Shown piece after piece: positions 26,464 through 50,800 of a stretch of 64,000 bases of DNA. The stretch lies in the sequence record NC_031927.1; one strand, given 5' to 3'. Below the pieces are notes generated by a model. The model saw only the letters and a program-made list of their open reading frames with translations. It was not told the DNA's origin and searched no databases. Made by a program: the position numbers and the translations under genes. Each line of letters begins with the position of its first letter. Position 1 is the stretch's first letter.

Positions 26464-26507
26464 ATGGAGTATAAATAACCTTAGGGAATCCATAGTATTA
26501 TTACAAG

Positions 26508-29500: not shown

Positions 29501-29633
29501 CGAAAACGGCACAAATGTTACGCAGAATTATACAATCACTTCAGGCAAAAATGCTATGAGTGCTGGTCCAATCACTATTAATACCGGAGTAACCGTAACA
29601 GTTCCTACTGGATCTGAGTGGACAGTTGTGTAA
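26508..29633 (+). CDS. Tail/virion fibre protein with collagen and repeated LTYNPST modules
   Basis: GPKGDQG/GAT repeats, F.G.GS.LT.L repeats, C-terminal [27 protein letters not shown]; TATAAATA at 26470. Confidence 0.88.
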
Positions 29634-34375: not shown

Positions 34376-34777
34376 ATGAATACTTATGGTTCTCCAGAAG
34401 GTTACCTATATAACCTTCATACCTGCTCCCCATCGGAAGCAAAGAGGATGTGGAAGAAAGCTATTAAAGAACAATGGGGTAATAAATGCGCTTACTGTGG
34501 CTCAGATACAAACCTAACATTAGATCATATAGTTCCACGTTCAAAAGGAGGTAGTAACCATACAACAAATGTATTATGTGCATGTGAATCATGCAACGCA
34601 GACAAAGCATATACTGAATGGATCATCTGGTATATCGAACAACCATTCTTCACAGAAGAGCGCCGTGAGGCAATCGAAAAATGGATGTTCCCTACAGAGG
34701 AAGTAAATCCAAATCTATTTGTGCAGGAGCAACCAAAGAGATACTCTTATGGTACCCGCAGAACTAGAGCTTACTGA
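34376..34777 (+). CDS. HNH endonuclease
   Basis: CAYCG...TLDHIVPRSKGGSNHTTNVLCACESCNADK. Confidence 0.92.
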   Translation: MNTYGSPEGYLYNLHTCSPSEAKRMWKKAIKEQWGNKCAYCGSDTNLTLDHIVPRSKGGSNHTTNVLCACESCNADKAYTEWIIWYIEQPFFTEERREAIEKWMFPTEEVNPNLFVQEQPKRYSYGTRRTRAY

Positions 34778-35005: not shown

Positions 35006-38000
35006 ATGATTTCATCAGAAACCAAGATTTTACTTAAGCGTTCTGGCGTTCCAGGACGTATTCCATCCTTAGCGGACCTAAAACTAGGCGAGTTGGGTAT
35101 CAACTATTATGACGGTAAGGTATACCTCCGTCAAGAAAATGATGTAGTTGGTTCCCGTATCATCGAGCCTGGTCAGGGTGACGATATTGGTAGGACTATT
35201 TTCGTAACCGTAAATGGTAACGACAACAACTCCGGTCTTAACGAGAGAGACTCCGTAAGAACCATCAAAAAAGCCGCTGAGTTAGCTCAGTTTGGCGATG
35301 GTATCAAGGTGTATCCTGGTCAGTATATCGAAGACAACCCCATTACATTCCGCGATTTGGTTGCGGTTGAGGGTATGGATCTTCGTAACGTCCTAGTTAC
35401 TCCTGCTAATCCAGAGAAAGATTTATATTTAGTTGGTGACGGTTTCCACGCAACTAACCATTCATTCGTATCAAACCAAGATTCTCGCGATGCTGCCGCG
35501 ATCATCTCATTCCGCCCTCTAGAAGGAACCGCATCTGATCGCTACTTTGATGCTGCCCGTCTAATCAGGGACAACCTAAACTTCATTTCAGGCGAAGCTG
35601 TAGGTTTCTTGACTAGTGGCTATTCAGGCTTTGCTGCTGGTCAAAGATCTCAAGATGCTGCTCGTGCTATTGAACTCAACACAAACTTTATTAGTGAAGA
35701 GTCCTTCCAGTATATCAACAGCCCAGATTATAGGGGTCCAGCATACACTAATCCAGATATCAACCAGTGTCGTAGTGACCTAAAGGATATTCTAGCTGGA
35801 TGGAGATATGACTTAATCTCTGATGGTAACTCCGAGTCAACTGGTGTAGGTCTAACCTACTACGCACCAGTCAAGTTCACCAAGACTACAAATATTACTG
35901 ACCTAGTTTATGATAACACAACTGGTTTGTTGGTTATTGAGACTGAACTAAGTACTCAATCACTACCTGGTGATGAGATTAAGCTAAGAGATATTCAACT
36001 AGATTGCCCTCCTTATGGTAATTCATTCCTAATTGCTGGATTTGATTATGATAATGTAAGTGGTGTTGGTACAGTAACTCTACCTTTCATCCACGATATT
36101 CAAGCTGGTGATACAATCAAGCTAGATGATCTCAAGTTTGACTGCCCTCCATATGGCGCTCAAGCATATTCAGTATCTGACTTTGTTTATGATGAGACTA
36201 CTGGCGGAAGCACAGTAACTCTATCAAGTAACCATAACCTTAAAGTTGGTGATGCAATTGAACTCCGCGATATGCAGTTTGATTGCCCAGCTTATGGTGG
36301 TACTTTCTCCAACGTTGTAAACATTGAGTATAACAATGTAAGTGGAGAAGCAATCCTAACTTATGCGGATGCTGCTGACCTAGACGCTGGTGATGTTGTT
36401 CTTCTATATGATATCAAGCTATCCTGCCCAGCATACGGCAATGCTATTTCAATCACTGGCTTCGATTACGACAACTTTACTGGTATAACACAAGCTTCTT
36501 TCGCATCACCTCACGGTCTACGGGTTGGTGATCTTGTTAAGTTTGAGAACCTTAAGTTTAGCTGTGAGAGCTACTTGAGCGACACTTATAATATCGTTGG
36601 ATTTGAGTACAACAATCTAACTGGTGAAGCTCTAGCATCATTCTCTTCTGATCACAACCTAGCTGGTGGAAGTAATGTTGTACTAGACAATCTAACCTTT
36701 GCTTGTAATAGCTACTTCCCAGAAGGAATCAATGTTACTGGATTTAACTACACCAATACAACTGGCGTAAGTACAATCAGCCTAGATCACGCACATAACT
36801 TACAGATTGGTGATCGTTTCCAACTAGAAGACCTAGTATTTGCTTGTAACAGCTACTCATTCACTGATATTGATGTTACCGCAGCAACTTACGATAACGT
36901 TACTGGCTTTGTAAACATCACTCTAGCTGCTCCTCACGGCAGTTCTGTTGGTGAGTTCGTCAAGCTAGACGGTATTGAGTACTCTTGCCCTGGTGGTTCT
37001 GGTATCACAACTACAATCTTCCCTGATGGAACGATTGGTGATCAGTTTGAGATCCTTTCAGTACCTTCACCTAGTGCTTTGATTGTAAATGTAGGTCCTT
37101 CTGCAATCCCACACAGCTATGTTGGTGGAGGAACTGCTACGGTTGGTATTACTACAACAGTATTCCCTGATGGAACTCAAGGTAATGAGTTTGTTGTAAC
37201 CGACCTAGTTGACTCCCTAACATTGGTAACAAACGTTGGTGTATCTACTATCGCTCACACATATGCTGGTAGTGGTAAGATCTTTGTTGGCTTCACAACA
37301 ACAGTATTCCCCGATGGAACACAAGGTAATGTATTCCCAGTTCTAGGAGTACCTGCTGCTAATCAAATAGCACTAAATGTTGGTACTAGCACCATCGAAC
37401 ATACTTATGTTGGTGGTGGTACAGCTTCTAATGAAGACACATTCCTAAATGTATCTGGCTTCACCTATAACGATGCCGATGGAACTGGATTAGTAACATT
37501 GGGTTCCAACCACAACCTAGTTGTTGGTGATAGTTTCATCCTAGAAGACCTCAAGTTTACTTGTGATAGTTACAGAAATACCGCAAGCACATTTGATATC
37601 AGTGACTTCCAGTATGATAATGTAACTGGTCTATCCACCGTTGTTATCACATCATCTCACGATCTACGGGTCAATGATACGATTGCTCTTTATGATATTG
37701 AGTTCTCTTGCCCCAATGGTTCTGGTATCACAACTACAATCTTCCCCGATGGAAGCGTAGATAACTTCTATGATGTTGTTGCGGTTATTGACCCCAACAC
37801 AATCATCACAAGAATTGGTACCTCCACAATCCCACACTCATATGTTCAGGGTGGTTTGCTTCAGGTTGGTATCACTACTAACATCTTCCCAGATGGAACA
37901 CGTCCAAGTGATAACTTCTTTGATGTTGTTTCAGTTCCAGCACCTAATCAGATCCTAACTAACGTTGGTTTGAGTTCTATTGCTCACACCTATGCTTCTG

Positions 38001-41000
38001 GCGGTAAGTTCTACACAGGTATCACAACTAATATCTTCCCCCAGACATTTGAAGATCCTAATGTAAAAGTTGTTAATGCCGTATATGATAATGTAACTGG
38101 TGCCGTAACAGTCACCTGTGATAAGCCCCACGGTCTATTAGCTACTAATACAGTACTTCTCCAAGGGCTAGAGTTCTCCTGTGCTTCAGGCGGTCCTGGT
38201 GGTGCTCCTGGTGTATTGCTATTCCCACGTAACCAAGAAACTTATGAGGTTGTATCTGTAGCTACTCCTACAACTTACACCATCAATGTTGGTCCAAACA
38301 GCATCCCACATACCTATGTTAGTGGTGGTATTTCTACTCCACAAAACATCATTGATGCGGTATACAACAGAGCCAACGGAGAACTAACAGTTACTCTAAA
38401 CAGACAGCACGGATATGTAGCAGGAGACACTGCTAGTGTTGTTGATTTAGTATTCTCCTGCCTATCTGGTGGAGAAGGTAATGCTCCAGGTGAACTAATC
38501 TTCCCTCGTCCTACTGATGAGTTTGTACTACTATCAATCTCTGGTAGTGAGTTTACTGTAAATGTAGGTGAGTCAAGTGGACTACCCCACACCTATGTAA
38601 ATGGTGGTTCTGTAAGCTATGCTGGAACAACCGCACAAGTAACAAGTGCATTATACAATGAAGAGACTGGTGTTCTAACAGTTACAACTAGTGCTCCATT
38701 GGGTGCTGCTGTTGATAACGTAGTCACAATGCAGGGTCTAAACTTTGCTTGTAACTCCGGTGGTCCTGGTAATGACCCAGGCACAATCATCTTCCCACGC
38801 CTAGATGTTCCTGTATTCAAAGTATCTAAAGTTATCAGTGGCGTAACTTATGTAATCAACGTCGGTACTTCCACTCTAGCACATACTTATGTGTCTGGTG
38901 GATTCTCAAGCCTAAAGAAAAAGGTTAATGATAACAACCTATTCAGAGTATTGGGCGTACCTACTCCCAACACAGTAGTAACTAATGTTGGTGTAAGCTC
39001 CATCCCACACACATATGTAAGTGGTGGTAATGGTTTCGTAGGAATTACAACTAACATCTTCCCTGACGGTACACGCCCTAACGGTAGCCGCTTTGAAGTG
39101 TTGAGTGTCCTATCACCTAACAAGGCAGTCATCAACGTAGGTGTCTCTACAATCCCACACTTCTATGAGAGTGGTGGTCAGGTTCAGTATGGTGAGACAA
39201 ATGAGCGTCCTATCCTAGCATTTGATTACAATAATCTAACTGGTGGAGCCAGAGTCACGGTTCGTGGTCCTCACGGTCTATCAGCTGGCGATAGCGTCAA
39301 GTTTGATGGTATGGAGTTTGAGTGTGTTAATAGCCCAGGCATTACAACTACAATCTTCCCTGACGGAACAGCAGCAAGTCTTAACCTCTTCCCTGTAACT
39401 GGTGTAGTAAACAACACCGTATTTGATTGTAATGTTGGACGGGTTCCTTTCACTCACACATATATTCAGGGTGGTTCTGCTTTCGTAGGAATTACAACTA
39501 ACATCTTCCCTGACGGCACACAAGGTTATAACTACACTGTTACTGGTGTTCCTTCATCCAATAAGGTCAACGTAAACGTCGGTGTTTCAAGCATCCAACA
39601 CAACTATGTTCGTGGTGGAGCACTATTTGCTGGCGAAACTAACGAGCGTGATATTGTTAACTTCAGCTATGATAATGAGTCTGGTCTAGCTATTCTAACT
39701 CTACGTCAGCCTGAAGATTTATACACAGGCAACCTTGTTAAGTTGAAGGGGCTTGAGTTTGATTGCCCCGATAGTACTGCTATCACTACAAATATCTTCC
39801 CTGATGGTTCACAAGGCTTCCTATTCCCAGTCACCGAGAGACTAAATCCAACACAATTCCAGTTGAATATTGGTCGCTCAACAATCCAGCACAACTATGT
39901 ACGGGGAACTGGCGCAGCATTCGTTGGTATCACTACTGATATCTTCCCTGACCTATCAACACAACCAACAAAACTATTCAATGTTGTTTCTATCCCTTCA
40001 CCCAACACCGTTGCGGTTCAGGTAGGAACTTCCACAATCCCACACAACTATGAGAGTGGTGGAACATTATCCGTTGGTATTAACACAGACATCTTCCCAG
40101 GTAGCAGTGTTGTGTCTCCTCTTGGCGATACATTTGTTATTGATGCCGTCACTTCTTCTGGTGAAATAGTAATTAATGTAGGAACTTCTTCTATCACTCA
40201 CAACTATGAGCGTGGTGGTCAGGTTCTATACGGACAGAGTTCTGGTGGAGAGCTACAGCACATCACTGGTCCTGGTGTTATGGATGCGACTATCGCAGCT
40301 ATTGACTTTGAGCGGCAGATGTCCAAGTATGTTTTGAATAACCGCCCTTGGGGTTCATTCATTGCTGCTGAAACTGGAATCGTTAATGGTATTGATTATG
40401 ATAATGTAACTGGCTTCGCTACAGTAACCGTACCTGGAATCAACGCTCAGCGTGGCGATATGGTAAGGATGAGTGATATTCAGTTCGTATGCTCTGATGA
40501 GTACGCTGGACTAACTACTACATTCTTCCCAGACAACACACGCCCAGAGGGTCAGTACTTTGAAGTTGAATCTCGTATTGATGAGAACTCATTTGAGACT
40601 TTCATTGGTATTTCTTCCATCAAGCATAATCACTTGAGAGGTGGTAATGTATACCGCTACAGACAAGGTATTGAGAATGTAATCTATGATAGAGCATCTG
40701 GTCTAGCTAGTGTAACCTCAATGGCTCACGGTTATAAGGTTGATGATATCATCGAAATGGGTGATATTAGATTTACCTGCCCAGTATTCACACCTGACTA
40801 CGACATTGAGAACTTCACATACGATAACACAACAGGTTTATCACAAGTAACTACAACAGTTGATAACGATATTCAAATTGGTGATTTGGTTCGCCTAGAT
40901 GATATCCAACTTGACTGTCCTGCTTATGGTAACGAGAGAGTTATTACGGACTTTGAGTACAACAATCTAAACGGTTACTCTGAAATTACAGTAGCATCTC

Positions 41001-44000
41001 CTCACGGTCTACAACTAAACCCAAGAACACCAGTAGCAATCACCACCGCAGTTTATGATAATGTAAGTGGTATTGTTACAGTAACTACTGCTGCTCCACT
41101 CAACATTGATTTGAGTATCAATAACGGAGTTCAGCTAACGGGTCTTGGATTCACCTGTTCTAACTCAACCACAACTACTAATGTTGTTGGTGCTGTATAC
41201 GATAACACAACTGGTGTTGTAAGAATCACAACCAACGCAGCTAACAACGCTGCTGTAAGTTCCAAGGTTAAGTTACAGAATCTAATCTTCTCTTGCGAGA
41301 GTGGTGGAGTTCCTTCCGATCAGGCATTCCCAAGTGGTGTTGATGGCTTTGACTTCCTAGTCAGTGAAGTAATCAGCGCAACCGAGTTCAATGCTATCGT
41401 TGGAGTCAGCACACTAACTCACACATATGTAACTGGCGGAACCGCACAAGTTGGTATCACTACTAACATCTTCCCTAGTGATGATACTCTTATCTACCCA
41501 ATAACAAATATTGAGAGTAGCACTAAGTTCTCACTACAAGTTGGTCCTTCTGCCTTTGCCCACACCTACACGGGTGGTGGTGATGCTACCAAGGTCAATC
41601 GTTATAGTGTGAAGCTAGCGGATATTAAGTTTGATTGCCCTGCTTATGGTAATGATATTGGTGTTACTAACTTTATTTACGATAACACATCAGGTAATTC
41701 ACTAGTAACCGTAGATTCCAATCACGGATTGAATGTTGGAGATAGCATTAAGCTAGCCAACCTCAAGTTCCAGTGCCCTCCTTATGGTAATCAGTTCAAT
41801 GTTATTGCTGCTGACTACGATAATGTAACTGGTATCATTACAGTAACAACTGACCGCGACCTAGATGGTATTTCTGTTGATGAAGTATTGAGACTAAGAG
41901 ATTTACAGTTTGATTGTAACTCTGGTACTCCATATGCTATTCAGCAGGTTACTTTCGATCCATTCAATGGTCGTATCGCAACTCTATCACTCGGTCAGAA
42001 CCCACAGGTCAATCCAGGTGACCTAATCAAACTAGAAGGTCTTCTATACAGAAATGCTGCTGGTGATGAAGTTCCATACCCAGACGGCAGAGACGCCAGC
42101 TACAATATTTTTGAAGCTCGTTCAGTAACTCAGGTCAATGCTAGTACTTGGGAAGTTACGGTTCAGTTCAATAATATTACAGATAGCTTGGTGATCTTTA
42201 TCCCTAATGGATCTAGCTACGGTACATTATTCACTGGCGTAACTGGTAACATCTTCCCCGAAAATGTTGGACCAGAAGGTGGCTTCTATAATGTATTGAG
42301 CCTACCATCACCTAATCAGTTCGCAATACAAGTCGGAACCTCAACAATTCCACACACATACATCCGCAATGGTGAAGCATTCTCTGGCGTAACAACCAAC
42401 TTCTTCCCAAGCACAGACCCACAGAACTCACCACTAGGTAATCTCTTTGAGGTTGTAGGAGTTCCTACGCCTAATCAGGTGAGAATCAATGTAGGCGTAT
42501 CAAGTATCAGCCACATCTATGATTCTGGTGGTCAGCTATTGGTTGGTATCACTACTAACATCTTCCCTGATGGAACACAAGGTAACTTGTTCCCTGTTGT
42601 AAGTATCGGTAGTTCCACTGAACTCCGCGTCAATGTAGGAACATCTTCTATCCCTCACAACTATATCAGTGGTGGATTGATGTTCGTTGGTATTACTACT
42701 AACATCTTCCCTGGTGACCCACAGAACTCACCACTAGGAAACATCTTTGAGGTTCTTGGTAAGGATGATGATTGTGGTAAGGATCGCTTTACTATCAACG
42801 TAGGTGTATCAACTATCCCTCACGCATATGTAGAAGGTGGTACGGTAACCACAGGCGTAACTACAAGCCGCTTCCCAGATGGAACCAACGGTTTTGAGTT
42901 CCCAGTTGAGAGTGTATTGGACGCAGACACATTCGTTGTTAATGTAGGTCCTTCATCAATCTCTCACACATATGTTGATGGTGGCTATTCTCGCCGCTTG
43001 GAGAGCCCAATCAATTCATTCCTATATGATAATGTAACTGGTTTCGCTGATGTTGGAATCACTAGCCACAGACTAAACGTCGGTGACCTAGTTAAGCTAC
43101 GCGATATCAAGTTTGATTGTGACCCATATGGTGGTGAGAAGTTCATCAACAATGTAGTATACAACAACCTAACTGGAAGACTAAACGTCAATACTATTGA
43201 GCCACACGGTCTATCTCTAAATGAGACCATCAAGCTCTCTGGTATTCAGATGGACTGCCCTGCTTATGGTAATCAGATTGCTATCACTGGCGCATCATAC
43301 AGTAATACTACTGGTGTTATTGATGTTACAGTCACCCAGGCACACAACCTATCTATTGGCGATAGCGTCAAGCTAGATGGTTTAGATTTCGTATGCCCTG
43401 GTGGTTCTGGTATCACAACTACAATCTTCCCTGACGGAACAGCAGCAAGCTACAACATCTATGAAGTTGTATCAGTACCTGCTGCGAATAGCCTAACAGT
43501 AAATGTAGGAACCTCAACGATTCCACACACATATACAGGCGGCGGAAACATCTTCGTTGGTATCACTACCAACATCTTCCCAGGCAGCGCACAGAACTCA
43601 CCACGCGGTAGCTTCTTCGAGGTTCTAGACACTCCATCAATTACAGAGTTCACTCTAAATGTTGGCGTATCTTCCATCGCTCACGGATATATTCGCGGCG
43701 GTTTCGTTCAGACTGGTGTAACAACAGACATCTTCCCTGACGGAACACAAGGTGATTACTTCCAGGTTGGTGAGATTATTGACGAAGATAACTTCACAAT
43801 CGATGCTGGTATCTCATCAATCACTCACAGATATAACTCTGGTGGTTATGGTGCTAAGTATGTTACTTATCAGGCAAGAACACCACAGGTTGTCGATACA
43901 TCAGTAATCCGCGTAAGCGGTGGCTGTAAGGCAGCTGAAGCTCGTGTAGATCAGTTGGCTGGGATTGTAACCTCTATCATACAGAACGGTCCTTCAGCGG

Positions 44001-47000
44001 CTCCTGGTGATGTCCCACTTAACGTAGTGGCTGCTTCTTATAACAAGCAGACTGGTGACCTATCAGTAACAACCTCAGGTGAGACTGGCGTTGCTCCTGT
44101 GGATACAGTTAAGATTGAGAATCTAATCTTCCAGTGTAGCAAGGTAAGCAATGTTATTGGTGCTACCTATGATAACACAACAGGCAAAGCTATCATCACA
44201 ACAGATGATGACAACGGCATCAGTATCGGCACCAAGATTAGATTGGAGGGACTAAACTTCGCTTGTAATGACGGAAGCCTAGTATATCCTTCAGATCCAA
44301 ATACGGTGTTTGATGTTATTGTTGTTCTAGGAGACAATAGATTTGAGCTTGACTTGGCTAAGTCAACAAAAGTTCATACTTGGACTGGTGGTGGTGTTTG
44401 TACTACGGTACCTACAACACGCACATTCCCAGACAATAAAGTATTCATCTACAATGTTAAGTCTGTTCTATCACCAACAACATTTACTGTAAATGTAGGT
44501 CCTTCTGATATCGATCATTCATATATCAGTGGCGGTCACGTATCACCAGGTCTACGCTACCAGGTTGATAACGCAGAATACAATAAGATTACTGGTCTTC
44601 TAACAGTAACTACCGATGTTGATAATCAACTCATAGCAAATACTGGAGTCAAGCTAAATGACTTACAGTTCTCCTGTACTTCAGGTGGTGCTAACAATCA
44701 GCCAGGTATTCTACCATTCCCAGATGGTCGTCCAGCTAACGTTGTGGCTGCTACTTATAATAATGTAACAGGTCTTCTTCGTGTTACTACAGATAAGCCT
44801 CATCAAGCATACGCAGATGTTAAGGTTCGCCTAGAAGGACTTGAGTTCTCCTGCCCAGGTGGTTCACTCATCTACCCAAGCAATCCTAATCAGTTGCTTC
44901 GCGTAACTAAAGTAGAAGACTTCTATACATATGAAGTTCTACTTGAGCCATCATCAAAAGTACATACTTATGTTCAGGGTGGAACATCTAGCACAGGAAC
45001 GAACCACTATTGCGTAGATTCTGTAATCAACTCACGCACATTTACAGTACAAATGGCTCCAAACAACCTAACTCACACATATGTGAGTGGTGGTACGGTT
45101 GCTTCAGTATTCTGTGAACAGATTCTAACTGGAATCAACCTACGCACAGCCAAGTGTGCTGATGATGTGAAGAAGATTTACCTAGCAGTTGTTCACGATG
45201 TTACTCGTGGCGGTAATATGAAGTCCGTTGCGGCAGCTAGAAAGTACTACGACGCAGTTGGTCAGTATCAGCACATTGCTGGTGGTGAAGTCAACCAGAC
45301 CGTAGCGGCACTAGACTACTCACTAAATGTCGTTCGCTGTGTAATCAATAACGTATCTTGGGGTGGCGTTCCACGTGGCTACTTCACTTCAAGGGAGAGA
45401 GCATTCATCCCAACCAAGTCAAACCTAGACGCACCTTTGGCTAACAGGTCACTATCAAGAGACCTACTACGCCTAGCGGATATGCCTCCTTCAACAACAC
45501 AATCTGTTGTTTGTATTGAGAAGCCTTTCGAGAAGGGTCAGTATACAACCAATAAGAAGTTTATTGAGGCATTTGACTACGATAACGTCACTGGTATTGC
45601 TTCAGTTACTACTACCCAGGCACACCGCCTAATCAAGTATGACGCAATCCGCCTAGATGATATCAAAATGCGTTGTGTTGGTAGTCCAAGAATCACCACA
45701 AATCTATTCCCAGATGGAACTCAAGGTGATATCTTCGAGGTCAAGCAAACCTTCCAGGATAATCCAATCTATCCAGTAAGTGATGCTACTTATAACAATA
45801 CCACTGGTAATCTACTTGTCGAGTCTCTCGGTAGTAATCTAGAACTTGAAGTAGGAACTCTAGTTAACCTACGCAACTTGAGATTTGAGTGTAGTTCATC
45901 TGGTGCTCCAGGCACTATCGTCTATCCAACAAACTCAGATTATGTATATGAGGTTAAGAAGATTATCAACGGAGATACAATCCTAGTCAACGTTGGTGTA
46001 TCAACTCTGGTACATACCTTTGTCCCAACATCAACTACTTTCAATGTACCTCAGTTCCAAGAGCTTCCTAGAAAGTTCATCGCTCACGTAGGAACAGTTG
46101 GTTTCCCACATATCTACGAGCAAGGTGGAACTGTATGGAAGCAAGAGCCATTCCAAACTCCAGAAAGTGCTACCCAGTTGCGCGATGTATCAATTCAAAA
46201 TGATCCGTTACAGTTTACCAATAGCACACCTAATGCTTGTGCGAATGTCTTCTCCGCCATTGAGAATACAGTTGGCGTTGTAACAACAATCATCGATGTT
46301 GGGTTTGAAGATTCTGGTATCTCTGTTAGGTATCCAGGTAATGATGGTAGGGGTGTTGATTCATTCGATCAAATGTCCTCACAGGGTGTCGGTAACATCA
46401 TCAGGGGTCCATACATCCGTAACTGCACGAACTTTGTTCCTAAGTCAATCGGTATGAGAATGGACGGTTTCGATGCTGAACCAGGCGATGAAATCTCCAA
46501 CGGTGTCCAAGGTTCATCTAACGTTGACTCCTTCACCCAGTTCAACCCAGGCGGTATTGGTTGTTCCGTATCAAACGGCACCTACCAGCAGCTCGTTTCT
46601 ATCTTCACCATCTGTTGTGACCAGGCTATTGTTTGTGACTCAGGCGCACAGCTTGACCTTACAAACTCTAACAGCTCCTTCGGACGCTTAGGTCTAGTCG
46701 CTCGCGGTATTGGTGATGCTAAGTCCAAGTGTATTGACCGCTACACGGGTATCGTTGCTGAGGAAGCCCAGATTGAAGATGATACAGTCATCATCCGGGG
46801 AGTGGGCGAGAAGCGCCCTTATGACGGTCAAGGAATCTTCTTCGGAGAACTCTTCCGCGAAGTTATCCGAATCGATGTTACTGATGGAGGTTCTGGTTAT
46901 GATGACGAGAATCCACCAGTAGCAACGGTAGATCTTCCCACTGGTCCTTCAGGTATTAAAGCTGAGGTATCACCAACAGTCCTAGACGGTGAGGTTGTTT

Positions 47001-47512
47001 CCATTGAACTTATCTCAAATGGTAACCAGTACAGAGACATTAGTCCAACTGTAACTATCGCACCACCAAGAGATCCTGAAGGCAGACAAGCTAAAGCTGT
47101 TGCGATCACAGAGCCTATCTACTATGACGTTGATAGTTCATCTGCTCCAGTAGAAGGAACTGTGAGAGTCGTATTCAAACAGAGGCTAAATAATACAGTA
47201 TCTGTAGGCACCACTGTATTCTTCTCTCGCCTAAGTCTACAAATCGCATCCTCACACTCCTTCGAGTACATCGGATCCGGTAATGAGATCAACGGCGCGA
47301 GACCTTCACAGGGCGGTGTTCCTATTAAGGCTAATGAGATCGTTAAGCAGGAAGGCGGTTCTATCGTCTACACCTCAACCGATCAGGCAGGTAACTTTAA
47401 CATCGGTGATGACTTCGTAATCAACCAGTTCACTGGTACAGTTACGGGTAGGTCCTTCGACCAATCGGTGCTAAATAAGGTAACGCCACTAATCATCGCA
47501 TTGGATAGCTAA
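35006..47512 (+). CDS. Giant (4168 aa) repetitive virion structural/fibre protein
   Basis: Fibre-type N-terminus (ILLKRS..PGRIP...GELGINYYDGK), many YDN.TG and IFPDG...VNVG.S.I.H.Y..GG repeats, C-terminal SSHSFEYIGSG...YTSTDQAGNF; TATAAATA at 34938. Confidence 0.9.
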   Translation: MISSETKILLKRSGVPGRIPSLADLKLGELGINYYDGKVYLRQENDVVGSRIIEPGQGDDIGRTIFVTVNGNDNNSGLNERDSVRTIKKAAELAQFGDGIKVYPGQYIEDNPITFRDLVAVEGMDLRNVLVTPANPEKDLYLVGDGFHATNHSFVSNQDSRDAAAIISFRPLEGTASDRYFDAARLIRDNLNFISGEAVGFLTSGYSGFAAGQRSQDAARAIELNTNFISEESFQYINSPDYRGPAYTNPDINQCRSDLKDILAGWRYDLISDGNSESTGVGLTYYAPVKFTKTTNITDLVYDNTTGLLVIETELSTQSLPGDEIKLRDIQLDCPPYGNSFLIAGFDYDNVSGVGTVTLPFIHDIQAGDTIKLDDLKFDCPPYGAQAYSVSDFVYDETTGGSTVTLSSNHNLKVGDAIELRDMQFDCPAYGGTFSNVVNIEYNNVSGEAILTYADAADLDAGDVVLLYDIKLSCPAYGNAISITGFDYDNFTGITQASFASPHGLRVGDLVKFENLKFSCESYLSDTYNIVGFEYNNLTGEALASFSSDHNLAGGSNVVLDNLTFACNSYFPEGINVTGFNYTNTTGVSTISLDHAHNLQIGDRFQLEDLVFACNSYSFTDIDVTAATYDNVTGFVNITLAAPHGSSVGEFVKLDGIEYSCPGGSGITTTIFPDGTIGDQFEILSVPSPSALIVNVGPSAIPHSYVGGGTATVGITTTVFPDGTQGNEFVVTDLVDSLTLVTNVGVSTIAHTYAGSGKIFVGFTTTVFPDGTQGNVFPVLGVPAANQIALNVGTSTIEHTYVGGGTASNEDTFLNVSGFTYNDADGTGLVTLGSNHNLVVGDSFILEDLKFTCDSYRNTASTFDISDFQYDNVTGLSTVVITSSHDLRVNDTIALYDIEFSCPNGSGITTTIFPDGSVDNFYDVVAVIDPNTIITRIGTSTIPHSYVQGGLLQVGITTNIFPDGTRPSDNFFDVVSVPAPNQILTNVGLSSIAHTYASGGKFYTGITTNIFPQTFEDPNVKVVNAVYDNVTGAVTVTCDKPHGLLATNTVLLQGLEFSCASGGPGGAPGVLLFPRNQETYEVVSVATPTTYTINVGPNSIPHTYVSGGISTPQNIIDAVYNRANGELTVTLNRQHGYVAGDTASVVDLVFSCLSGGEGNAPGELIFPRPTDEFVLLSISGSEFTVNVGESSGLPHTYVNGGSVSYAGTTAQVTSALYNEETGVLTVTTSAPLGAAVDNVVTMQGLNFACNSGGPGNDPGTIIFPRLDVPVFKVSKVISGVTYVINVGTSTLAHTYVSGGFSSLKKKVNDNNLFRVLGVPTPNTVVTNVGVSSIPHTYVSGGNGFVGITTNIFPDGTRPNGSRFEVLSVLSPNKAVINVGVSTIPHFYESGGQVQYGETNERPILAFDYNNLTGGARVTVRGPHGLSAGDSVKFDGMEFECVNSPGITTTIFPDGTAASLNLFPVTGVVNNTVFDCNVGRVPFTHTYIQGGSAFVGITTNIFPDGTQGYNYTVTGVPSSNKVNVNVGVSSIQHNYVRGGALFAGETNERDIVNFSYDNESGLAILTLRQPEDLYTGNLVKLKGLEFDCPDSTAITTNIFPDGSQGFLFPVTERLNPTQFQLNIGRSTIQHNYVRGTGAAFVGITTDIFPDLSTQPTKLFNVVSIPSPNTVAVQVGTSTIPHNYESGGTLSVGINTDIFPGSSVVSPLGDTFVIDAVTSSGEIVINVGTSSITHNYERGGQVLYGQSSGGELQHITGPGVMDATIAAIDFERQMSKYVLNNRPWGSFIAAETGIVNGIDYDNVTGFATVTVPGINAQRGDMVRMSDIQFVCSDEYAGLTTTFFPDNTRPEGQYFEVESRIDENSFETFIGISSIKHNHLRGGNVYRYRQGIENVIYDRASGLASVTSMAHGYKVDDIIEMGDIRFTCPVFTPDYDIENFTYDNTTGLSQVTTTVDNDIQIGDLVRLDDIQLDCPAYGNERVITDFEYNNLNGYSEITVASPHGLQLNPRTPVAITTAVYDNVSGIVTVTTAAPLNIDLSINNGVQLTGLGFTCSNSTTTTNVVGAVYDNTTGVVRITTNAANNAAVSSKVKLQNLIFSCESGGVPSDQAFPSGVDGFDFLVSEVISATEFNAIVGVSTLTHTYVTGGTAQVGITTNIFPSDDTLIYPITNIESSTKFSLQVGPSAFAHTYTGGGDATKVNRYSVKLADIKFDCPAYGNDIGVTNFIYDNTSGNSLVTVDSNHGLNVGDSIKLANLKFQCPPYGNQFNVIAADYDNVTGIITVTTDRDLDGISVDEVLRLRDLQFDCNSGTPYAIQQVTFDPFNGRIATLSLGQNPQVNPGDLIKLEGLLYRNAAGDEVPYPDGRDASYNIFEARSVTQVNASTWEVTVQFNNITDSLVIFIPNGSSYGTLFTGVTGNIFPENVGPEGGFYNVLSLPSPNQFAIQVGTSTIPHTYIRNGEAFSGVTTNFFPSTDPQNSPLGNLFEVVGVPTPNQVRINVGVSSISHIYDSGGQLLVGITTNIFPDGTQGNLFPVVSIGSSTELRVNVGTSSIPHNYISGGLMFVGITTNIFPGDPQNSPLGNIFEVLGKDDDCGKDRFTINVGVSTIPHAYVEGGTVTTGVTTSRFPDGTNGFEFPVESVLDADTFVVNVGPSSISHTYVDGGYSRRLESPINSFLYDNVTGFADVGITSHRLNVGDLVKLRDIKFDCDPYGGEKFINNVVYNNLTGRLNVNTIEPHGLSLNETIKLSGIQMDCPAYGNQIAITGASYSNTTGVIDVTVTQAHNLSIGDSVKLDGLDFVCPGGSGITTTIFPDGTAASYNIYEVVSVPAANSLTVNVGTSTIPHTYTGGGNIFVGITTNIFPGSAQNSPRGSFFEVLDTPSITEFTLNVGVSSIAHGYIRGGFVQTGVTTDIFPDGTQGDYFQVGEIIDEDNFTIDAGISSITHRYNSGGYGAKYVTYQARTPQVVDTSVIRVSGGCKAAEARVDQLAGIVTSIIQNGPSAAPGDVPLNVVAASYNKQTGDLSVTTSGETGVAPVDTVKIENLIFQCSKVSNVIGATYDNTTGKAIITTDDDNGISIGTKIRLEGLNFACNDGSLVYPSDPNTVFDVIVVLGDNRFELDLAKSTKVHTWTGGGVCTTVPTTRTFPDNKVFIYNVKSVLSPTTFTVNVGPSDIDHSYISGGHVSPGLRYQVDNAEYNKITGLLTVTTDVDNQLIANTGVKLNDLQFSCTSGGANNQPGILPFPDGRPANVVAATYNNVTGLLRVTTDKPHQAYADVKVRLEGLEFSCPGGSLIYPSNPNQLLRVTKVEDFYTYEVLLEPSSKVHTYVQGGTSSTGTNHYCVDSVINSRTFTVQMAPNNLTHTYVSGGTVASVFCEQILTGINLRTAKCADDVKKIYLAVVHDVTRGGNMKSVAAARKYYDAVGQYQHIAGGEVNQTVAALDYSLNVVRCVINNVSWGGVPRGYFTSRERAFIPTKSNLDAPLANRSLSRDLLRLADMPPSTTQSVVCIEKPFEKGQYTTNKKFIEAFDYDNVTGIASVTTTQAHRLIKYDAIRLDDIKMRCVGSPRITTNLFPDGTQGDIFEVKQTFQDNPIYPVSDATYNNTTGNLLVESLGSNLELEVGTLVNLRNLRFECSSSGAPGTIVYPTNSDYVYEVKKIINGDTILVNVGVSTLVHTFVPTSTTFNVPQFQELPRKFIAHVGTVGFPHIYEQGGTVWKQEPFQTPESATQLRDVSIQNDPLQFTNSTPNACANVFSAIENTVGVVTTIIDVGFEDSGISVRYPGNDGRGVDSFDQMSSQGVGNIIRGPYIRNCTNFVPKSIGMRMDGFDAEPGDEISNGVQGSSNVDSFTQFNPGGIGCSVSNGTYQQLVSIFTICCDQAIVCDSGAQLDLTNSNSSFGRLGLVARGIGDAKSKCIDRYTGIVAEEAQIEDDTVIIRGVGEKRPYDGQGIFFGELFREVIRIDVTDGGSGYDDENPPVATVDLPTGPSGIKAEVSPTVLDGEVVSIELISNGNQYRDISPTVTIAPPRDPEGRQAKAVAITEPIYYDVDSSSAPVEGTVRVVFKQRLNNTVSVGTTVFFSRLSLQIASSHSFEYIGSGNEINGARPSQGGVPIKANEIVKQEGGSIVYTSTDQAGNFNIGDDFVINQFTGTVTGRSFDQSVLNKVTPLIIALDS

Positions 47513-47516
47513 CACC

Positions 47517-47867
47517 ATGGCAGCAGTAGCACTAAACAAATTTCTAACGGTAAGACATTTGGTTACCGACTCCAATGTGGGGATTTATACCTCCCCCATT
47601 GGTGTTGCTTCCATCGTTCTTTTTGCCCAGGCAACGAACGTGTCTTCCGATGGTGAAGTAAAATTCGTCACCTTTTCTCACGCCAGACCAGGTGATATAC
47701 CAGTGGATTTTCAAATTATCAATGATGGTCCAGTCATCCCCAACGATGCACTGAACCTAATTATTGGTAGACTTGTCCTGGAAACAGGAGATGAGTTAAT
47801 CCTTTCAGGCGATACGACCGGAGATGTGAAGGTTGTAGTCTCTATTCTCGAAACAGCTAAGAGCTAA
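47517..47867 (+). CDS. Small beta-rich protein, probable partner of the giant fibre
   Basis: Directly follows the giant gene; YTSP.G..SIVL..Q.TN...LVLETGD pattern. Confidence 0.75.
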   Translation: MAAVALNKFLTVRHLVTDSNVGIYTSPIGVASIVLFAQATNVSSDGEVKFVTFSHARPGDIPVDFQIINDGPVIPNDALNLIIGRLVLETGDELILSGDTTGDVKVVVSILETAKS

Positions 47868-47896: not shown

Positions 47897-50800
47897 ATGG
47901 CATTATTTTATCAGTCAGGCAGAGTAAGTAGATTCGCAGTAGGTACACCTGGGTTTTCAACCAACAGGGACCTAACTCTTAATGTGTCTGGCGCTATTGG
48001 TATTGAAACTACTAAACCTAGGGGGAGCATTGATACTCCAGAGATTAGTATTAGAGGACCAATTATTGACTCAGGAATCAATACAGGTGGTTTAGGATAT
48101 TTCTTATCACAGGATGTAGAAGGTGTTAAGTGGGTTGCTGCTTCACCAGAAGACTTAACATTTATTAGAGTATTTGAAGATAATGTACAGGTTGGCGTTA
48201 GTTCCTTCAGTGGACTAAACTTCATATCAAATGACTCTTCATTATTTGATATTAAAGAAAGTCCAATTGGTCCCAATATTGCGGACATTAATTTTAATAC
48301 ATACTGGATTAGAACCGAGTATGGTAATAACGCAGGTATTTCAACTGGCTATGGACCAGACGGCACCTATGCTTCCCTCCCTGGTTATGGAACCAGCGAA
48401 GCAGTAGGTGTTACTTCTGTTGGTATTGGTACAGACAATCCACAAGATGACTTCCAAGTTGGTATTGGATCCACTGGTGTTACTATCAATGGACCTGAAG
48501 GTAAGCTAGAAGCAGAAATTATTAAAGCCAAGAACCTTGAGCTTGATGGTAATATTACTGTTAGATCACTAGTTGTTGATCCAGGTATTGCTACATTCCG
48601 TGGAAATATTGATGCTCAAGGTATCTCTAGCTTCACTGGGGATGTTATAGCTGGGTTCGCTACTATACAGGAGCTATATGTAAATGATTTAGAGGTTGAA
48701 TTATTCAGGGCAGGTGTATCAACATTAGGTTTTGGACAATCGGCATCTTCATTTACTATTGTAGAGAATAGTTTAGAGGTTCAGGGTGCTATTGGTACAT
48801 TTATCAATGATCTATATGTCGGAAATGACCTTTATGTTGCTGGTGATACATTCTTCAACCAGATCAATGCCGAAAATATTCAAGTAACAGGCATTGCGAC
48901 ATTAAATAATGTTGAAGGAAACACGGGGATCTTCACTAGCTTTGAAGTAACAGGGATCACCACACTAAATCAGCTTGAGTTTAATACGGGAGTAGGTACT
49001 GATTTACAGTTAGAGTCTTCAACTATTGGTGTATTAACAGCGACTGATGTTAGTGCTGGTGTTGCTACTATTGGCTTTGCTAATATTGATGATGCTAATA
49101 TCAGTGGTATCGTAACAGTAACCGAAGTTGATGTAGAAGAGATTGATATTGAGCGTGCCCAAGTAGGCATCCTAACAATCACTGAGGGTCTATCAGTAAC
49201 TGGTACCAGTACCTTTGTTGGTCTAGTAACCGTAACTGGCGACGCATTCATTGATGGTGACCTAACAGTTACTGATCAGTTCACAGTACAAGATCTAGGA
49301 GCAGAGAACCTAGAAGTAACTGGTATTGGTACCATTGTAAATCTAGAATCTAATGTTGGTATTATCACCACATTGTTCACAGAAGGTTCTGTTAATACTG
49401 GTGTTGGTACATTCAATGTTGTTGAAGCCAATGATATTCAGTCAGGCACTGGTACTATTGGTGGTGTTGGCTTTGAGTCTGGTAGGCTAGAGGGAACTGA
49501 ACTAGATTTTGATATTGGTCGCATCGGTATTCTAACTGGTGACCTACTCAGTTATGGTATTGGTACATTTAGAGATAGGCTAGACAGCCCAGGCATCTCT
49601 AATATTGCCGTTGCTATTGGTAATACTCTAAACTATGATAGCACATCACAGATTAATGGTGTTACATTTGGTGATGAGTTAGTAGATATATTCAATAGAG
49701 ACCTAAGAGTAACTGGCATAACAACCTTTACTGGTGTGGGTACATTCGGATCAGATCTATATGTAAAAGAAGATCTATTTGTTGGTGGTGAACTAAGTTT
49801 TGAACAACTAACAGGTACCAACCTACAGGTTCTAGGTATCGCAACAGTTAATCAACTAGATCTAAACACAGGTATTGGTACCTTCCTAGACCTAGAGTTC
49901 CTACAAGTTGGTGTTGCTACTATCACCAACCTACTAGGAACGATCTCAACAATCACCAGAATGGACTCTGGTACTGTTGCTGTTACTACTGATCCAGGTA
50001 AATATCCAACATCAGACGGTCAGTTCTATGCTGATAGATCATTCATTGAATTTTCTAATGCCCTTGATAGTCGCACCACAGACTTTGTTGCTAGAGAAAC
50101 AGCAGACATCCAAGGTACATTAGAAGTTGTTGGTCTATCAACATTCGATTCTGATATTGATGTAAACGCAGATATCAATGTATCTGGTCTAACTACAACC
50201 AACTTCCTATTCGCTGGCGTAGGTACAATCCTACTATTAGATACAGACTTCATTGACTCTGATGAGATCAACGCAGGTATCATTACAACCCAAGATTTAG
50301 TTGTTACAGGTTCTGCTGACTTCCAAGGAGATGTTGTTGTAGACATCGGTGGTACAGCTAATATCACCAACGCAAACATTGGGTTCGCTAGCGTCACTGA
50401 GGAGGTCGTAGGAACCTCTACAGTAGGCTTCTTGAGTGCTACTGATGCGAACATCGGCGTAGCAACTGTCGGGCTTCTAAGCGCCACAGATGCAGAGATA
50501 GAAGACCTTGAGGTTAATACATTCCGTGCTGGTATTGCTACGGTAGGCTTCGGTTCATTCGGCACTGATCCAAATGAAGGTTCCCTATATGTAACGGGTA
50601 TCAATACATTTGTTGGCTTCACTACATTCACTGGAGAGGTTTATGTTGATGGTGACCTAACAGTATCAGGTATTACAACATTCAAGCAGTTGGATGCGGA
50701 ACAATCACAGATTGGTATCCTAACCACCAAGACTCTACTAGATTCTAATGGTCTAATCGACGCAGAGAATGTTGCTATCAGCACAAACCTAACAGTTTCT

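What the first reader, a model, noticed from the sequence alone, without database searches (positions are those of the whole stretch)
35888..46142. Russian-doll architecture: the 4168-aa protein is a ~95-aa domain recursively inserted into itself (balanced-parenthesis repeats)
SEEN (manual parse of the translation): two half-repeats, A = [x-Y(D/N)NxTG-xxxVT-xxxH(G/N)L-xxGDx(V/I)KLxxLxFxC] and B = [ITTxIFPDG-xxxFxVxxV-xxxxxVNVGxSxIxHxYxxGG]. A followed by B is one complete domain. The order is not (AB)n but nested. Block 1 (~35888-40234) is AAAAAAAA BBB AA BB [B split by three whole AB] B A BB A BBB, i.e. 15 A and 15 B, depth 8, returning to zero exactly where a helical spacer resumes. Block 2 (~40380-43862) has 12/12 (depth 6, with one A itself split by an inserted AABB). 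Block 3 (~44021-45113) has 4/4 and block 4 (~45556-46142) has 2/2. The total is 33 A and 33 B, and every block closes at zero. Insertions occur mainly at the post-Cys loop (C-PxYG). INFERENCE: each A pairs with a B up to well over 1000 residues later, giving out-and-back antiparallel stalks with side branches, i.e. a branched, tree-like fibre encoded by one chain. Standard repeat or domain annotation would miss this.
Basis: partly seen in the sequence, partly recalled or inferred. Interest (0 to 1): 0.9.

Follow-up and report, generated by a model that had tools for sequence, protein, structure and literature searches.

The report
Self-nested beta-barrel repeats, cyanophage fibre protein
A 4168-residue tail-fibre-like protein of the marine cyanophage S-CAM7 is built from 33 copies of one small domain that sit inside loops of one another up to eight levels deep instead of head to tail, a repeat architecture that standard annotation does not see and that I could not find described anywhere.

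Summary
The window is Synechococcus phage S-CAM7. ORF 35006-47512 (gp208, "hypothetical protein") has two half-repeat types. Every block is a balanced-parenthesis word, with maximum depth 8. Three B halves and one A half are split and enclose whole AB units.

The rule holds across the family. Homologues read AB, AABB, ABAB, AAABBB, AAAABBBB and AABABB. A and B counts correlate at r=0.96 in 102 proteins. Relatives differ by balanced sets of units.

AlphaFold2 on a natural AABB piece gives a confident all-beta model. Removing the outer B left the outer A's confidence unchanged, but its last two strands disappeared. Structural support is therefore indirect, and no contact map was available. Covariation between matched halves is weak.

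The unit matches no Pfam, NCBIfam or PDB sequence. Its fold weakly resembles the small beta-barrels E1 FCCH, P22 I-domain and endosialidase barrel.

The termini match tail-fibre PHROGs, the gene sits beside baseplate genes, and one homologue's record labels it a virion protein. The best reading is recursive self-insertion giving out-and-back, branched stalks. The 3D shape and the function are inferred.

The parts
35006..47512 (+). Giant ORF, 4168 aa. It is S-CAM7 BOW86_gp208 / YP_009323182.1, annotated 'hypothetical protein'.
   Evidence: It belongs to PHROG 3442 (unknown function) over its whole length.
35006..35896 (+). N-terminal conserved region (aa 1-297). About 190 aa are shared with short homologues and with tail-fibre / baseplate-wedge PHROGs. 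A helical-looking pre-block segment follows.
   Evidence: There is a weak DUF1565 (beta-helix) hit and no PDB sequence relative.
35897..40219 (+). Block 1 (aa 298-1738). One tree of 15 AB units, depth 8. The outermost pair is A 298-334 with B 1692-1738, 1357 aa apart.
38021..39028 (+). Split B half of the depth-5 unit. The N piece is aa 1006-1015 and the C piece is aa 1309-1341. Together they enclose three whole AB units (aa 1023-1299).
36728..37285 (+). Natural A7-A8-B1-B2 fragment (aa 575-760), used for structure prediction.
40220..40384 (+). Spacer 1 (aa 1739-1793). It resembles the segment that precedes AB blocks in homologues.
40385..43846 (+). Block 2 (aa 1794-2947), 12 units in three top-level trees: AB (40385-40645), a depth-6 tree (40676-42985) and AAABBB (43016-43846).
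40946..41638 (+). Split A half. Its pieces are aa 1981-2004 and aa 2201-2211, and they enclose an AABB (aa 2013-2192).
   Evidence: The ACG-2014f orthologue has only AB at this position.
41978..42142 (+). Degenerate innermost AB unit of block 2 (aa 2325-2379).
43847..44026 (+). Spacer 2 (aa 2948-3007). It resembles the segment that follows AB blocks in homologues.
44027..45094 (+). Block 3 (aa 3008-3363). It holds AABB (44027-44536), then an A whose B half is split by a whole AB (44570-45094).
45095..45568 (+). Spacer 3 (aa 3364-3521). Residues 10-97 of this spacer repeat the pre-block segment.
45569..46129 (+). Block 4 (aa 3522-3708). An A, then a B half split by a whole AB.
46130..47512 (+). 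C-terminal region (aa 3709-4168). It comprises a post-block segment, a beta-helix-like segment (aa 3801-3936) and a conserved C-terminal domain of about 230 aa that is shared with cyanophage 'tail fiber' proteins.
   Evidence: No PDB sequence relative.
47517..47867 (+). Small ORF (116 aa, PHROG 1276). It lies directly downstream of the homologous gene in every locus examined and may be a partner protein.

Best explanation
The gene encodes a virion tail-fibre or baseplate-associated protein of a T4-like cyanophage. Its central 3400 residues are 33 copies of one all-beta domain of about 85 aa (probably a small beta-barrel).

Each domain is written in two halves. The A half ends in a near-invariant Cys. 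The B half carries a near-invariant His. New copies were added inside loops of existing copies rather than next to them: 20 at the A|B junction, 5 in the first loop of B and 1 inside A.

The chain therefore runs outward through a series of A halves and returns through the matching B halves in last-in-first-out order. Successive domains are tied by two short linkers (9-10 aa on the way out, 5 aa on the way back). Sibling insertions create side branches.

This gives seven domain trees in four blocks, separated by recurring spacer segments. The conserved N- and C-terminal parts are brought back together.

What is shown: the two half types, their order, the splits, the family-wide grammar and the restriction to marine cyanophages. 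What is inferred: physical pairing of matched halves, a rod-like or branched shape, and a role as an extendable multivalent reach or adhesion module for the host surface.
For: Homologues: P-SSM2, S-SRM01 and Sf-CH8 read AB; S-B05 reads AABB; S-8S53 reads AABB AB; S-SKS1 reads AB AB; S-SCSM1 reads AB, AAABBB, AB. ACG-2014f equals S-CAM7 except for two whole AB units.

Among 150 library representatives, blocks made only of complete halves are well-formed 105 times and ill-formed 21 times. All 27 blocks with two A and two B read AABB or ABAB; none reads ABBA, BAAB, BABA or BBAA. A-run/B-run blocks have equal counts in 22 of 25 cases.

A and B counts correlate at r=0.957 in 102 proteins that have both flanks. 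A metagenomic relative (P0003) has the S-CAM7 trunk and two leaves but lacks 8 A and 8 B.

The AlphaFold2 AABB model has mean pLDDT 81.8, with four strands per half and the outer A at pLDDT 91-94. With the outer B deleted, strands 3-4 of the outer A and strand 1 of the inner B vanish, while strands 3-4 of the inner A stay.

Linker lengths and near-invariant columns (A37 Cys 98%, B37 His 99%) are.

Virion context: the termini match tail-fibre PHROGs. The gene lies next to baseplate-wedge genes. The S-SCSM1 homologue is labelled a virion protein in its GenBank record; that phage's virion proteome was measured by mass spectrometry (PMC9602691). The paper text I read does not name this ORF.
Against: No contact-level evidence could be obtained, because the prediction tool returns no contacts or PAE.

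The orphan outer A kept pLDDT 88-92 without its B. AlphaFold2 therefore does not show that A needs B to be confidently modelled.

A mirror-tree test of matched halves gave no signal, even for contiguous pairs. Couplings learnt on contiguous AB units favour the parenthesis-matched partner only weakly: p is 0.01-0.3 with distal-only alternatives and 0.03-0.45 per independent protein group.

About a quarter of the family's proteins show unequal counts, mostly with A above B. This is probably due to lower sensitivity of the B model, but that is not proven.

Oligomeric state is unknown. Presence of gp208 itself in S-CAM7 virions has not been shown.
Confidence: 0.75

Rival explanations
1. A and B are two independent repeat modules. 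Each folds by itself or with its sequence neighbours, so runs of A and runs of B form successive segments of a conventional, possibly trimeric, one-way fibre. The balanced counts then reflect duplication history rather than physical pairing.
For: The orphan A keeps high pLDDT and its first hairpin when its B is removed. There is no mirror-tree signal, and covariation between matched halves is only weak.
Against: This model cannot explain why solitary units are always AB with a 5-aa linker. It cannot explain why halves are split exactly around whole AB units, or why A and B counts match across independent lineages and contexts. It cannot explain why relatives differ by equal numbers of A and B lying on both sides of a shared core. 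It also cannot explain why strands 3-4 of an A half are present only when the matched B half is present in the models.
Confidence: 0.1
2. The halves do pair A with B, but between chains. Two or more extended chains lie antiparallel, and the A run of one chain is completed by the B run of another. This is a domain-swapped oligomeric fibre twice as long as the hairpin.
For: An antiparallel dimer satisfies the same last-in-first-out register as an intrachain hairpin, so the sequence grammar alone does not separate the two. Phage fibres are usually oligomers (established knowledge).
Against: Contiguous AB units with 5-aa linkers are modelled as single compact domains in a monomer prediction. Single-AB homologues need no partner chain. 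Side branches and split halves are simpler to close within one chain.
Confidence: 0.08
3. The pattern is a chance or parsing artefact of a low-complexity, beta-rich repeat protein.
For: One unit is degenerate, and several distant relatives parse incompletely.
Against: The chance probability is 7.7e-7 or less. The same grammar recurs in relatives, which are clustered at 50% identity. The gene has the same length and is 99.6-100% identical in four S-CAM7 records, and it is intact in dozens of ACG-2014f isolates.
Confidence: 0.01

Closest known systems
Insertion beta-barrel domains: ubiquitin E1 FCCH domain (PDB 2v31), phage P22 coat I-domain (2m5s, 5uu5), endosialidase beta-barrel (K1F 1v0e/3ju4, phi92 4hiz)
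   Same: These are the best fold matches of the modelled AB unit. All are beta-barrels of about 90-120 aa. From my own knowledge, each occurs as a guest domain inserted in a loop of a larger host domain, which requires adjacent N- and C-termini. BFVD entries among the weaker structural matches carry the 'E1 FCCH' and 'endosialidase beta barrel' labels.
   Different: Similarity is weak: best E is 2.3e-3, TM is 0.5 or less, and nothing is below 1e-3. There is no sequence or Pfam relationship. In the known cases one barrel is inserted once into a different host domain. Here the host is another copy of the same barrel, recursively.
Nested multi-domain pilus adhesins of Gram-positive bacteria, e.g. 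pneumococcal RrgA (from my own knowledge, not tested here)
   Same: The architecture is a 'Russian doll', in which one domain is inserted in a second that is itself inserted in a third. The chain goes out and comes back, and the tip domain is presented on a stalk.
   Different: These adhesins have two or three levels, with unrelated domain types at each level. They show no recursion of one family, no branching and no homology to this protein. This protein has 33 copies of one domain at depth 8.
Streptococcal antigen I/II-type stalks, in which an A region pairs with a P region (from my own knowledge, not tested here)
   Same: Two different repeat types that are far apart in sequence pair antiparallel to make an out-and-back stalk. 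Repeat numbers on the two sides match.
   Different: Those stalks are an alpha-helix wound with a polyproline helix, not globular domains completed from two halves. There is one hairpin, with no nesting grammar and no side branches. The models here are all-beta.
Tandem-domain phage fibres and giant adhesins (Ig-like or beta-helical arrays)
   Same: A long surface or virion protein made of many copies of one small beta domain. Copy number varies widely between relatives: 1 to 33 units here.
   Different: The units there are head to tail and the chain runs one way. Here only 7 of 33 units are top-level; the other 26 lie inside another unit.
Shorter cyanophage homologues: P-SSM2 PSSM2_293 'tail fiber protein' (617 aa), S-SCSM1 SSCSM1_26 'long tail fiber protein (virion protein)' (1478 aa), ACG-2014f gp265 (3967 aa)
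   Same: These are true homologues. They share the N- and C-terminal regions, the synteny with the small downstream ORF and the baseplate genes, and the AB unit.
   Different: They carry 1 to 31 units. In the P-SSM2 type the AB block sits after the beta-helix-like segment, whereas in the S-CAM7 type it sits before it. None is annotated as having a nested architecture.

Membership tests
Domain-insertion (discontinuous-domain) architecture | A parent domain is interrupted in sequence by one or more complete guest domains, and the two parent pieces are complementary. | tested here: met
   The split B halves match HMM positions 1 to about 10-24 and about 10-14 to 43, and they flank whole AB units. 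The split A half matches positions 1-24 and 27-37, flanking AABB. The same split types recur in relatives.
Domain-insertion (discontinuous-domain) architecture | The separated pieces of the parent domain pack together in three dimensions. | tested here: inconclusive
   The AABB model is confident for all four halves. Deleting the outer B removes strands 3-4 of the outer A but not its pLDDT. No contact or PAE output was available. The covariation test is weak.
Tandem-repeat fibrous protein | Complete units are arranged head to tail along the chain. | tested here: not met
   Only 7 of 33 units are top-level. There are runs of up to 8 A halves without any B.
E1 FCCH / P22 I-domain / endosialidase beta-barrel fold class | Significant structural similarity of the unit to these barrels. 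| tested here: inconclusive
   They are the top Foldseek PDB hits with probability about 1.0, but E is 2.3e-3 or weaker and TM is 0.52 or less.
E1 FCCH / P22 I-domain / endosialidase beta-barrel fold class | Sequence-profile membership (Pfam models or a PDB sequence match). | tested here: not met
   There is no Pfam hit above threshold in the repeat regions. There is no NCBIfam hit. The AB profile has no PDB sequence hit at E up to 1.
T4-like cyanophage tail-fibre / baseplate structural proteins | Homology of the terminal regions to annotated tail-fibre families, and position in the structural gene cluster. | tested here: met
   PHROG 17885 'tail fiber protein' matches the N terminus at E 6e-92 and the C terminus at E 6e-124. 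Other tail-fibre and baseplate-wedge PHROGs also match. The neighbours are baseplate-wedge genes. Synteny is conserved in eight other phages.
T4-like cyanophage tail-fibre / baseplate structural proteins | The protein is physically present in the virion. | not tested
   There are no data for S-CAM7 gp208. The GenBank record labels the S-SCSM1 homologue a virion protein. The paper reports a virion proteome by mass spectrometry (PMC9602691), but the text read does not name this ORF.
T4-like cyanophage tail-fibre / baseplate structural proteins | Homo-trimeric fibre assembly. | not testable with these tools
   No multimer prediction was available.
Mtd_N-type N-terminal domain (PF18454) | A Pfam hit at the extreme N terminus. 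| tested here: inconclusive
   A family member, P0037, hits Mtd_N at E 1.6e-9. The S-CAM7 N terminus gave no such hit at E up to 0.01.

The most novel reading that the evidence does not exclude
These proteins define a new class of repeat architecture: a single-chain, self-similar tree of domains that grows by recursive self-insertion of one beta-barrel. Fibre length and branching could then evolve by adding balanced sub-trees while both chain ends stay anchored in the baseplate-proximal core. Each domain would be clamped across its two halves by a site that includes the near-invariant Cys of A and His of B (possibly a metal site). The resulting physically branched, multivalent stalks would be what reaches host surface structures.
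Probability: 0.4. Interest if true: 0.9.

Novelty: new variant of a known kind. Interest (0 to 1): 0.78.

Why it matters
Repeat proteins are classified and detected as tandem arrays, and domain insertion is known as an occasional one- or two-level event between different domains. If the reading here is right, insertion of a domain into itself has been used systematically, to depth 8 with 33 copies and with side branches, across a whole family of marine phage proteins. The AB profile finds 552 clusters among 1.84 billion representatives.

This would be a new way to build and lengthen a fibre. The chain returns to its start, every joint has two linkers, and copy number changes by balanced sub-trees.

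It also exposes a blind spot in annotation. The largest gene of S-CAM7 and its relatives is 'hypothetical' and has no Pfam or NCBIfam domain, and halves more than 1000 residues apart belong together. That matters for domain parsers, for segment-wise structure prediction of fibres, and for interpreting host-recognition genes of abundant ocean cyanophages.

Tried and rejected
1. Mirror-tree (Mantel) test. I correlated A-A similarities with similarities of the matched B halves in S-CAM7. The result was r about 0.1 and p 0.16-0.28, even for contiguous pairs. The test has no power here and was dropped.

2. Mutual-information couplings. These were learnt on 316 contiguous AB units (Meff 268) and applied to 93 sequence-distant pairs. 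A few A-B couplings exceed a shuffled null, and matched partners scored better than all other B halves (p about 1e-3). With the fair control (other distant B halves only) the signal falls to p 0.01-0.3. I report it as suggestive only.

3. AlphaFold2 deletion control. I expected the confidence of the orphan A to collapse, and it did not. Only the strand assignment changed.

4. Sequence searches for a known family. These covered Pfam, NCBIfam, the PDB by profile, and the PDB by sequence for both termini. Nothing was found.

5. Recent DNA duplications that might show the unit of expansion. All intragenic DNA repeats are old (60-80% identity) and correspond to the conserved motifs only.

6. Literature. 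Eight full-text searches and four papers consulted gave no description of this architecture.

7. Block-level grammar test including partial HMM hits. Many distant relatives fail it because divergent halves are only partly detected. I therefore also give the figures for blocks made of complete halves only.

8. Artefact or assembly error. Rejected, because four S-CAM7 records carry the same-length gene at 99.6-100% identity.

Full report
**Identity and context.** The window is 100% identical to Synechococcus phage S-CAM7 (NC_031927.1), a T4-like cyanomyovirus of the Kyanoviridae. The finding lies in one intact ORF, 35006..47512 (+), 4168 aa. This is BOW86_gp208, annotated 'hypothetical protein'.

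An HNH endonuclease gene lies upstream. A 116-aa ORF (47517..47867, PHROG 1276) lies downstream, followed by a 2014-aa 'baseplate wedge subunit' and further baseplate genes. The whole protein matches PHROG 3442 (unknown function). Its first ~295 and last ~380 residues also match PHROG 17885 'tail fiber protein' (E 6e-92 and 6e-124) and other tail-fibre and baseplate-wedge PHROGs.

**Checking the observation.** The search converged at once to a 37-position A model and a 43-position B model with 34 hits each.

Three B hits and one A hit are partial, and they come in complementary pairs:
- B positions 1-30 at aa 1006 with positions 10-43 at aa 1309.
- B positions 1-24 at aa 3563 with positions 14-43 at aa 3678.
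- A positions 1-24 at aa 1981 with positions 27-37 at aa 2201.

A fourth split B lies at aa 3233/3330. Each split encloses only complete units: (AB)x3, AB, AABB and AB.

Block 2 (aa 1794-2947) has 12 A and 11 clear B. Its twelfth unit is degenerate and is detectable only locally (A E 9e-6, B E 5e-3). Blocks 3 and 4 are 4/4 and 2/2.

The total is 33 units: 7 top-level and 26 inside another unit. Of those 26, 20 are at the A|B junction just after the conserved Cys, 5 are in B after its first strand and 1 is inside A. The outermost pair of block 1 is separated by 1357 residues.

The probability that four blocks of these sizes are all balanced and never negative is 7.7e-7 for random A/B tokens, and about 3e-4 given equal counts. 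No other ORF in any frame of the window carries the units, apart from one marginal B-like hit in the next gene.

**Does the rule hold outside this protein?** This is the strongest evidence. Homologues found through the C-terminal domain were fetched and parsed with the S-CAM7 models:
- P-SSM2, S-SRM01 and Sf-CH8: AB
- S-B05: AABB
- S-8S53: AABB AB
- S-SKS1: AB AB
- S-SCSM1: AB, AAABBB, AB

The 3967-aa ACG-2014f orthologue has the S-CAM7 string except that the split A encloses AB instead of AABB, and block 3 starts with AB instead of AABB. In other words, it differs by two whole AB units placed at junctions.

A profile of 13 contiguous AB units from the window was searched against 1.84 billion cluster representatives. 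It found 552 proteins at E up to 1e-3 and 325 at E up to 1e-10. I parsed the best 150 with broadened models and left out the S-CAM7-like giants:
- Blocks made only of complete halves are well-formed 105 times: AB 66, AABB 17, ABAB 10, AAABBB 3, AAAABBBB 2, AABABB 2, AABBAB 2, and one each of AABABABB, AAAABBBAABBB and AAAAABBABBABBB.
- They are ill-formed 21 times. The ill-formed blocks are short fragments such as ABA or AA (17 of the 21), and some runs look like pieces cut off by a gap.
- All 27 blocks with two A and two B are AABB or ABAB. None is ABBA, BAAB, BABA or BBAA.
- A-run/B-run blocks have equal counts in 22 of 25 cases.
- When partial hits are included, 110 of 276 blocks parse, against 44.8 expected after shuffling.

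In 102 proteins that have both flanks, A and B counts correlate at r=0.957 and are equal in 54. The excess of A over B fits a less sensitive B model. Runs of eight A also occur in a 5469-aa protein with a quite different N-terminal 3300 residues (P0006).

A 3090-aa metagenomic relative (P0003) has a block 1 that reads AAAAABBABBABBB. Its halves map best onto the S-CAM7 trunk, its innermost contiguous unit and its two single-unit side branches. S-CAM7 therefore has 8 extra A and 8 extra B distributed on both sides of a shared core.

**Why last-in-first-out.** Any balanced string could formally be matched first-in-first-out. Several observations point to the nested matching:
- Solitary units are always a contiguous A then B joined by 5 residues.
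- The innermost pair of every nest has the same 5-residue junction.
- Halves are split around whole units.
- Linkers are short and uniform: A to A 9-10 aa, B to B 5 aa, B to A 8-13 aa. Neighbouring levels must therefore be in contact, which a first-in-first-out pairing could satisfy only by closing rings.

**Structure.** AlphaFold2 was run on the natural A7-A8-B1-B2 fragment (aa 575-760) with an alignment of five window paralogues. It gave mean pLDDT 81.8 and pTM 0.54, with four strands in each half. The outer A had pLDDT 91-94 and the outer B 84-94. The only weak region is the A|B junction loop, which is where guests are inserted.

As a control I predicted the same five paralogues truncated just before the outer B. 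The orphan outer A kept pLDDT 88-92, so the prediction does not say that A is disordered without B. However, its strands 3 and 4 (residues 30-34 and 36-40) and the first strand of the inner B were no longer assigned as strands. The equivalent strands 3-4 of the inner A, whose partner B is present, remained.

Strand assignment needs hydrogen-bonded partners, and the only residues removed were the outer B. This is indirect evidence that the second half of A is completed by its matched B. The tool gives no contacts or PAE, so I cannot go further.

The AABB model matches BFVD models of cyanophage proteins strongly: ACG-2014f E 2e-20 (TM 0.64 over 185 columns), S-SCSM1, S-PRM1 and a gp7-like protein of S-SSM7.

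In the PDB nothing reaches E 1e-3. The best matches are the E1 FCCH beta-barrel (2v31, E 2.3e-3, TM 0.52), the P22 coat I-domain and the endosialidase beta-barrel. From established knowledge, all three are guest domains inserted in larger hosts. That fits a fold whose two ends lie together, but membership of that fold class is not established.

There is no Pfam, NCBIfam or PDB sequence match for the unit or for either terminus.

**Tests that gave little.** A mirror-tree test was uninformative. Couplings learnt on contiguous units and applied to distant pairs go in the expected direction, but only weakly once the control is fair. Intragenic DNA repeats are all old, so the expansions are not recent.

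**Anatomy beyond the repeats.** Near-invariant columns across 703 A and 323 B sequences are A5 Tyr 99%, A10 Gly 100%, A37 Cys 98%, B7 Pro 99%, B31 Gly 97%, B37 His 99% and B39 Tyr 91%. One Cys per A and one His per B could form a site made from both halves. That is speculation.

The spacers between blocks are not random. Spacers 1 and 3 repeat the segment that precedes AB blocks in homologues, and spacers 2 and 4 repeat the segment that follows them.

In P-SSM2-type proteins the AB block lies after a beta-helix-like segment. In S-CAM7-type proteins the whole spacer-plus-block region lies before that segment. The AB module therefore occupies different host positions in the two subfamilies.

**Distribution and function.** Among 50,697 phage records, the AABB fragment finds 83 by translated search. 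All are Synechococcus or Prochlorococcus phages or marine single-cell viral contigs. Some of these hits lie in other baseplate or fibre genes. Library members are unnamed proteins from metagenome sources, several from Tara.

The S-SCSM1 homologue is labelled a virion protein in its GenBank record. That phage's virion proteome was measured by mass spectrometry (PMC9602691); the text I read does not name the ORF.

The most likely role is a baseplate-attached fibre whose AB trees provide reach and multivalent, probably glycan-type, contacts with the host surface. This is inference from context and from the weak likeness to the endosialidase barrel.

One preprint reports that S-CAM7 associates with host type IV pili more than S-PM2 and S-RSM4 do (10.1101/2025.09.20.677514). 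It did not examine tail proteins, so this is context only.

**Novelty.** Domain insertion and two- or three-level nesting of different domains are known. I found no description of systematic self-insertion of one domain in eight full-text searches and four papers consulted. I rate it a new variant of a known kind, of high interest. The physical pairing and the fibre shape are the points still to be shown.

Noticed in passing
window 47517-47867 (+): A 116-aa ORF matches PHROG 1276 over its whole length. A similar small ORF follows the homologous fibre gene in all eight other phages examined, and it is labelled 'virion protein' in S-SCSM1. The RefSeq record of S-CAM7 annotates only a 54-aa CDS ending at the same stop (record 199824-199988), so the annotated start looks too far downstream. 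PHROG 1276 also matches parts of the A-run of the giant protein.
   Followed up: partly
window 34376-34777 (+): An HNH endonuclease gene lies directly upstream of the giant gene. An HNH gene holds the same position in ACG-2014f, P-SSM2 and S-SRM01, so the HNH-fibre adjacency is conserved across genera.
   Followed up: no
window 40220-40384, 43847-44026, 45095-45568, 46130-46405: The spacers between repeat blocks are themselves of two recurring kinds, a 'pre-block' and a 'post-block' segment. They also flank AB blocks in homologues. This suggests a higher-order unit (pre-segment, AB tree, post-segment) that may itself be a split domain.
   Followed up: partly
window 46406-46813 versus L006 (P-SSM2) about 9060-9430: The beta-helix-like segment (aa 3801-3936) lies after the AB blocks in the S-CAM7, Sf-CH8 and S-SKS1 types, but before the AB block in the P-SSM2, S-SRM01, S-B05 and S-8S53 types. 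The AB module is therefore inserted at different places of the conserved scaffold in the two subfamilies.
   Followed up: partly
all AB units, e.g. window 36869-37141: Each unit has one near-invariant Cys (last residue of A, 98% of 703 sequences) and one near-invariant His (B position 37, 99% of 323). They are contributed by different halves and could form a metal or other site bridging the halves.
   Followed up: no
window 47897-53941 (+): The neighbouring 2014-aa 'baseplate wedge subunit' gives one marginal B-like hit (E 5e-4). In other cyanophages (S-T4, Sf-CH8, S-SSM7) clear AB units occur in baseplate-wedge or gp7-like genes at other loci.
   Followed up: partly
C-terminal about 30-130 aa of several homologues (e.g. 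L006 P-SSM2 protein aa about 560-590): The broadened A model gives a lone A-like hit near the C terminus of the conserved C-terminal domain in several homologues. This is perhaps a related beta-hairpin motif and is not part of the nests.
   Followed up: no
window 24910-29633 (+): There are two further fibre-like genes upstream. One is a collagen-triple-helix repeat protein. The other is a 1041-aa protein that matches many tail-fibre PHROGs.
   Followed up: no
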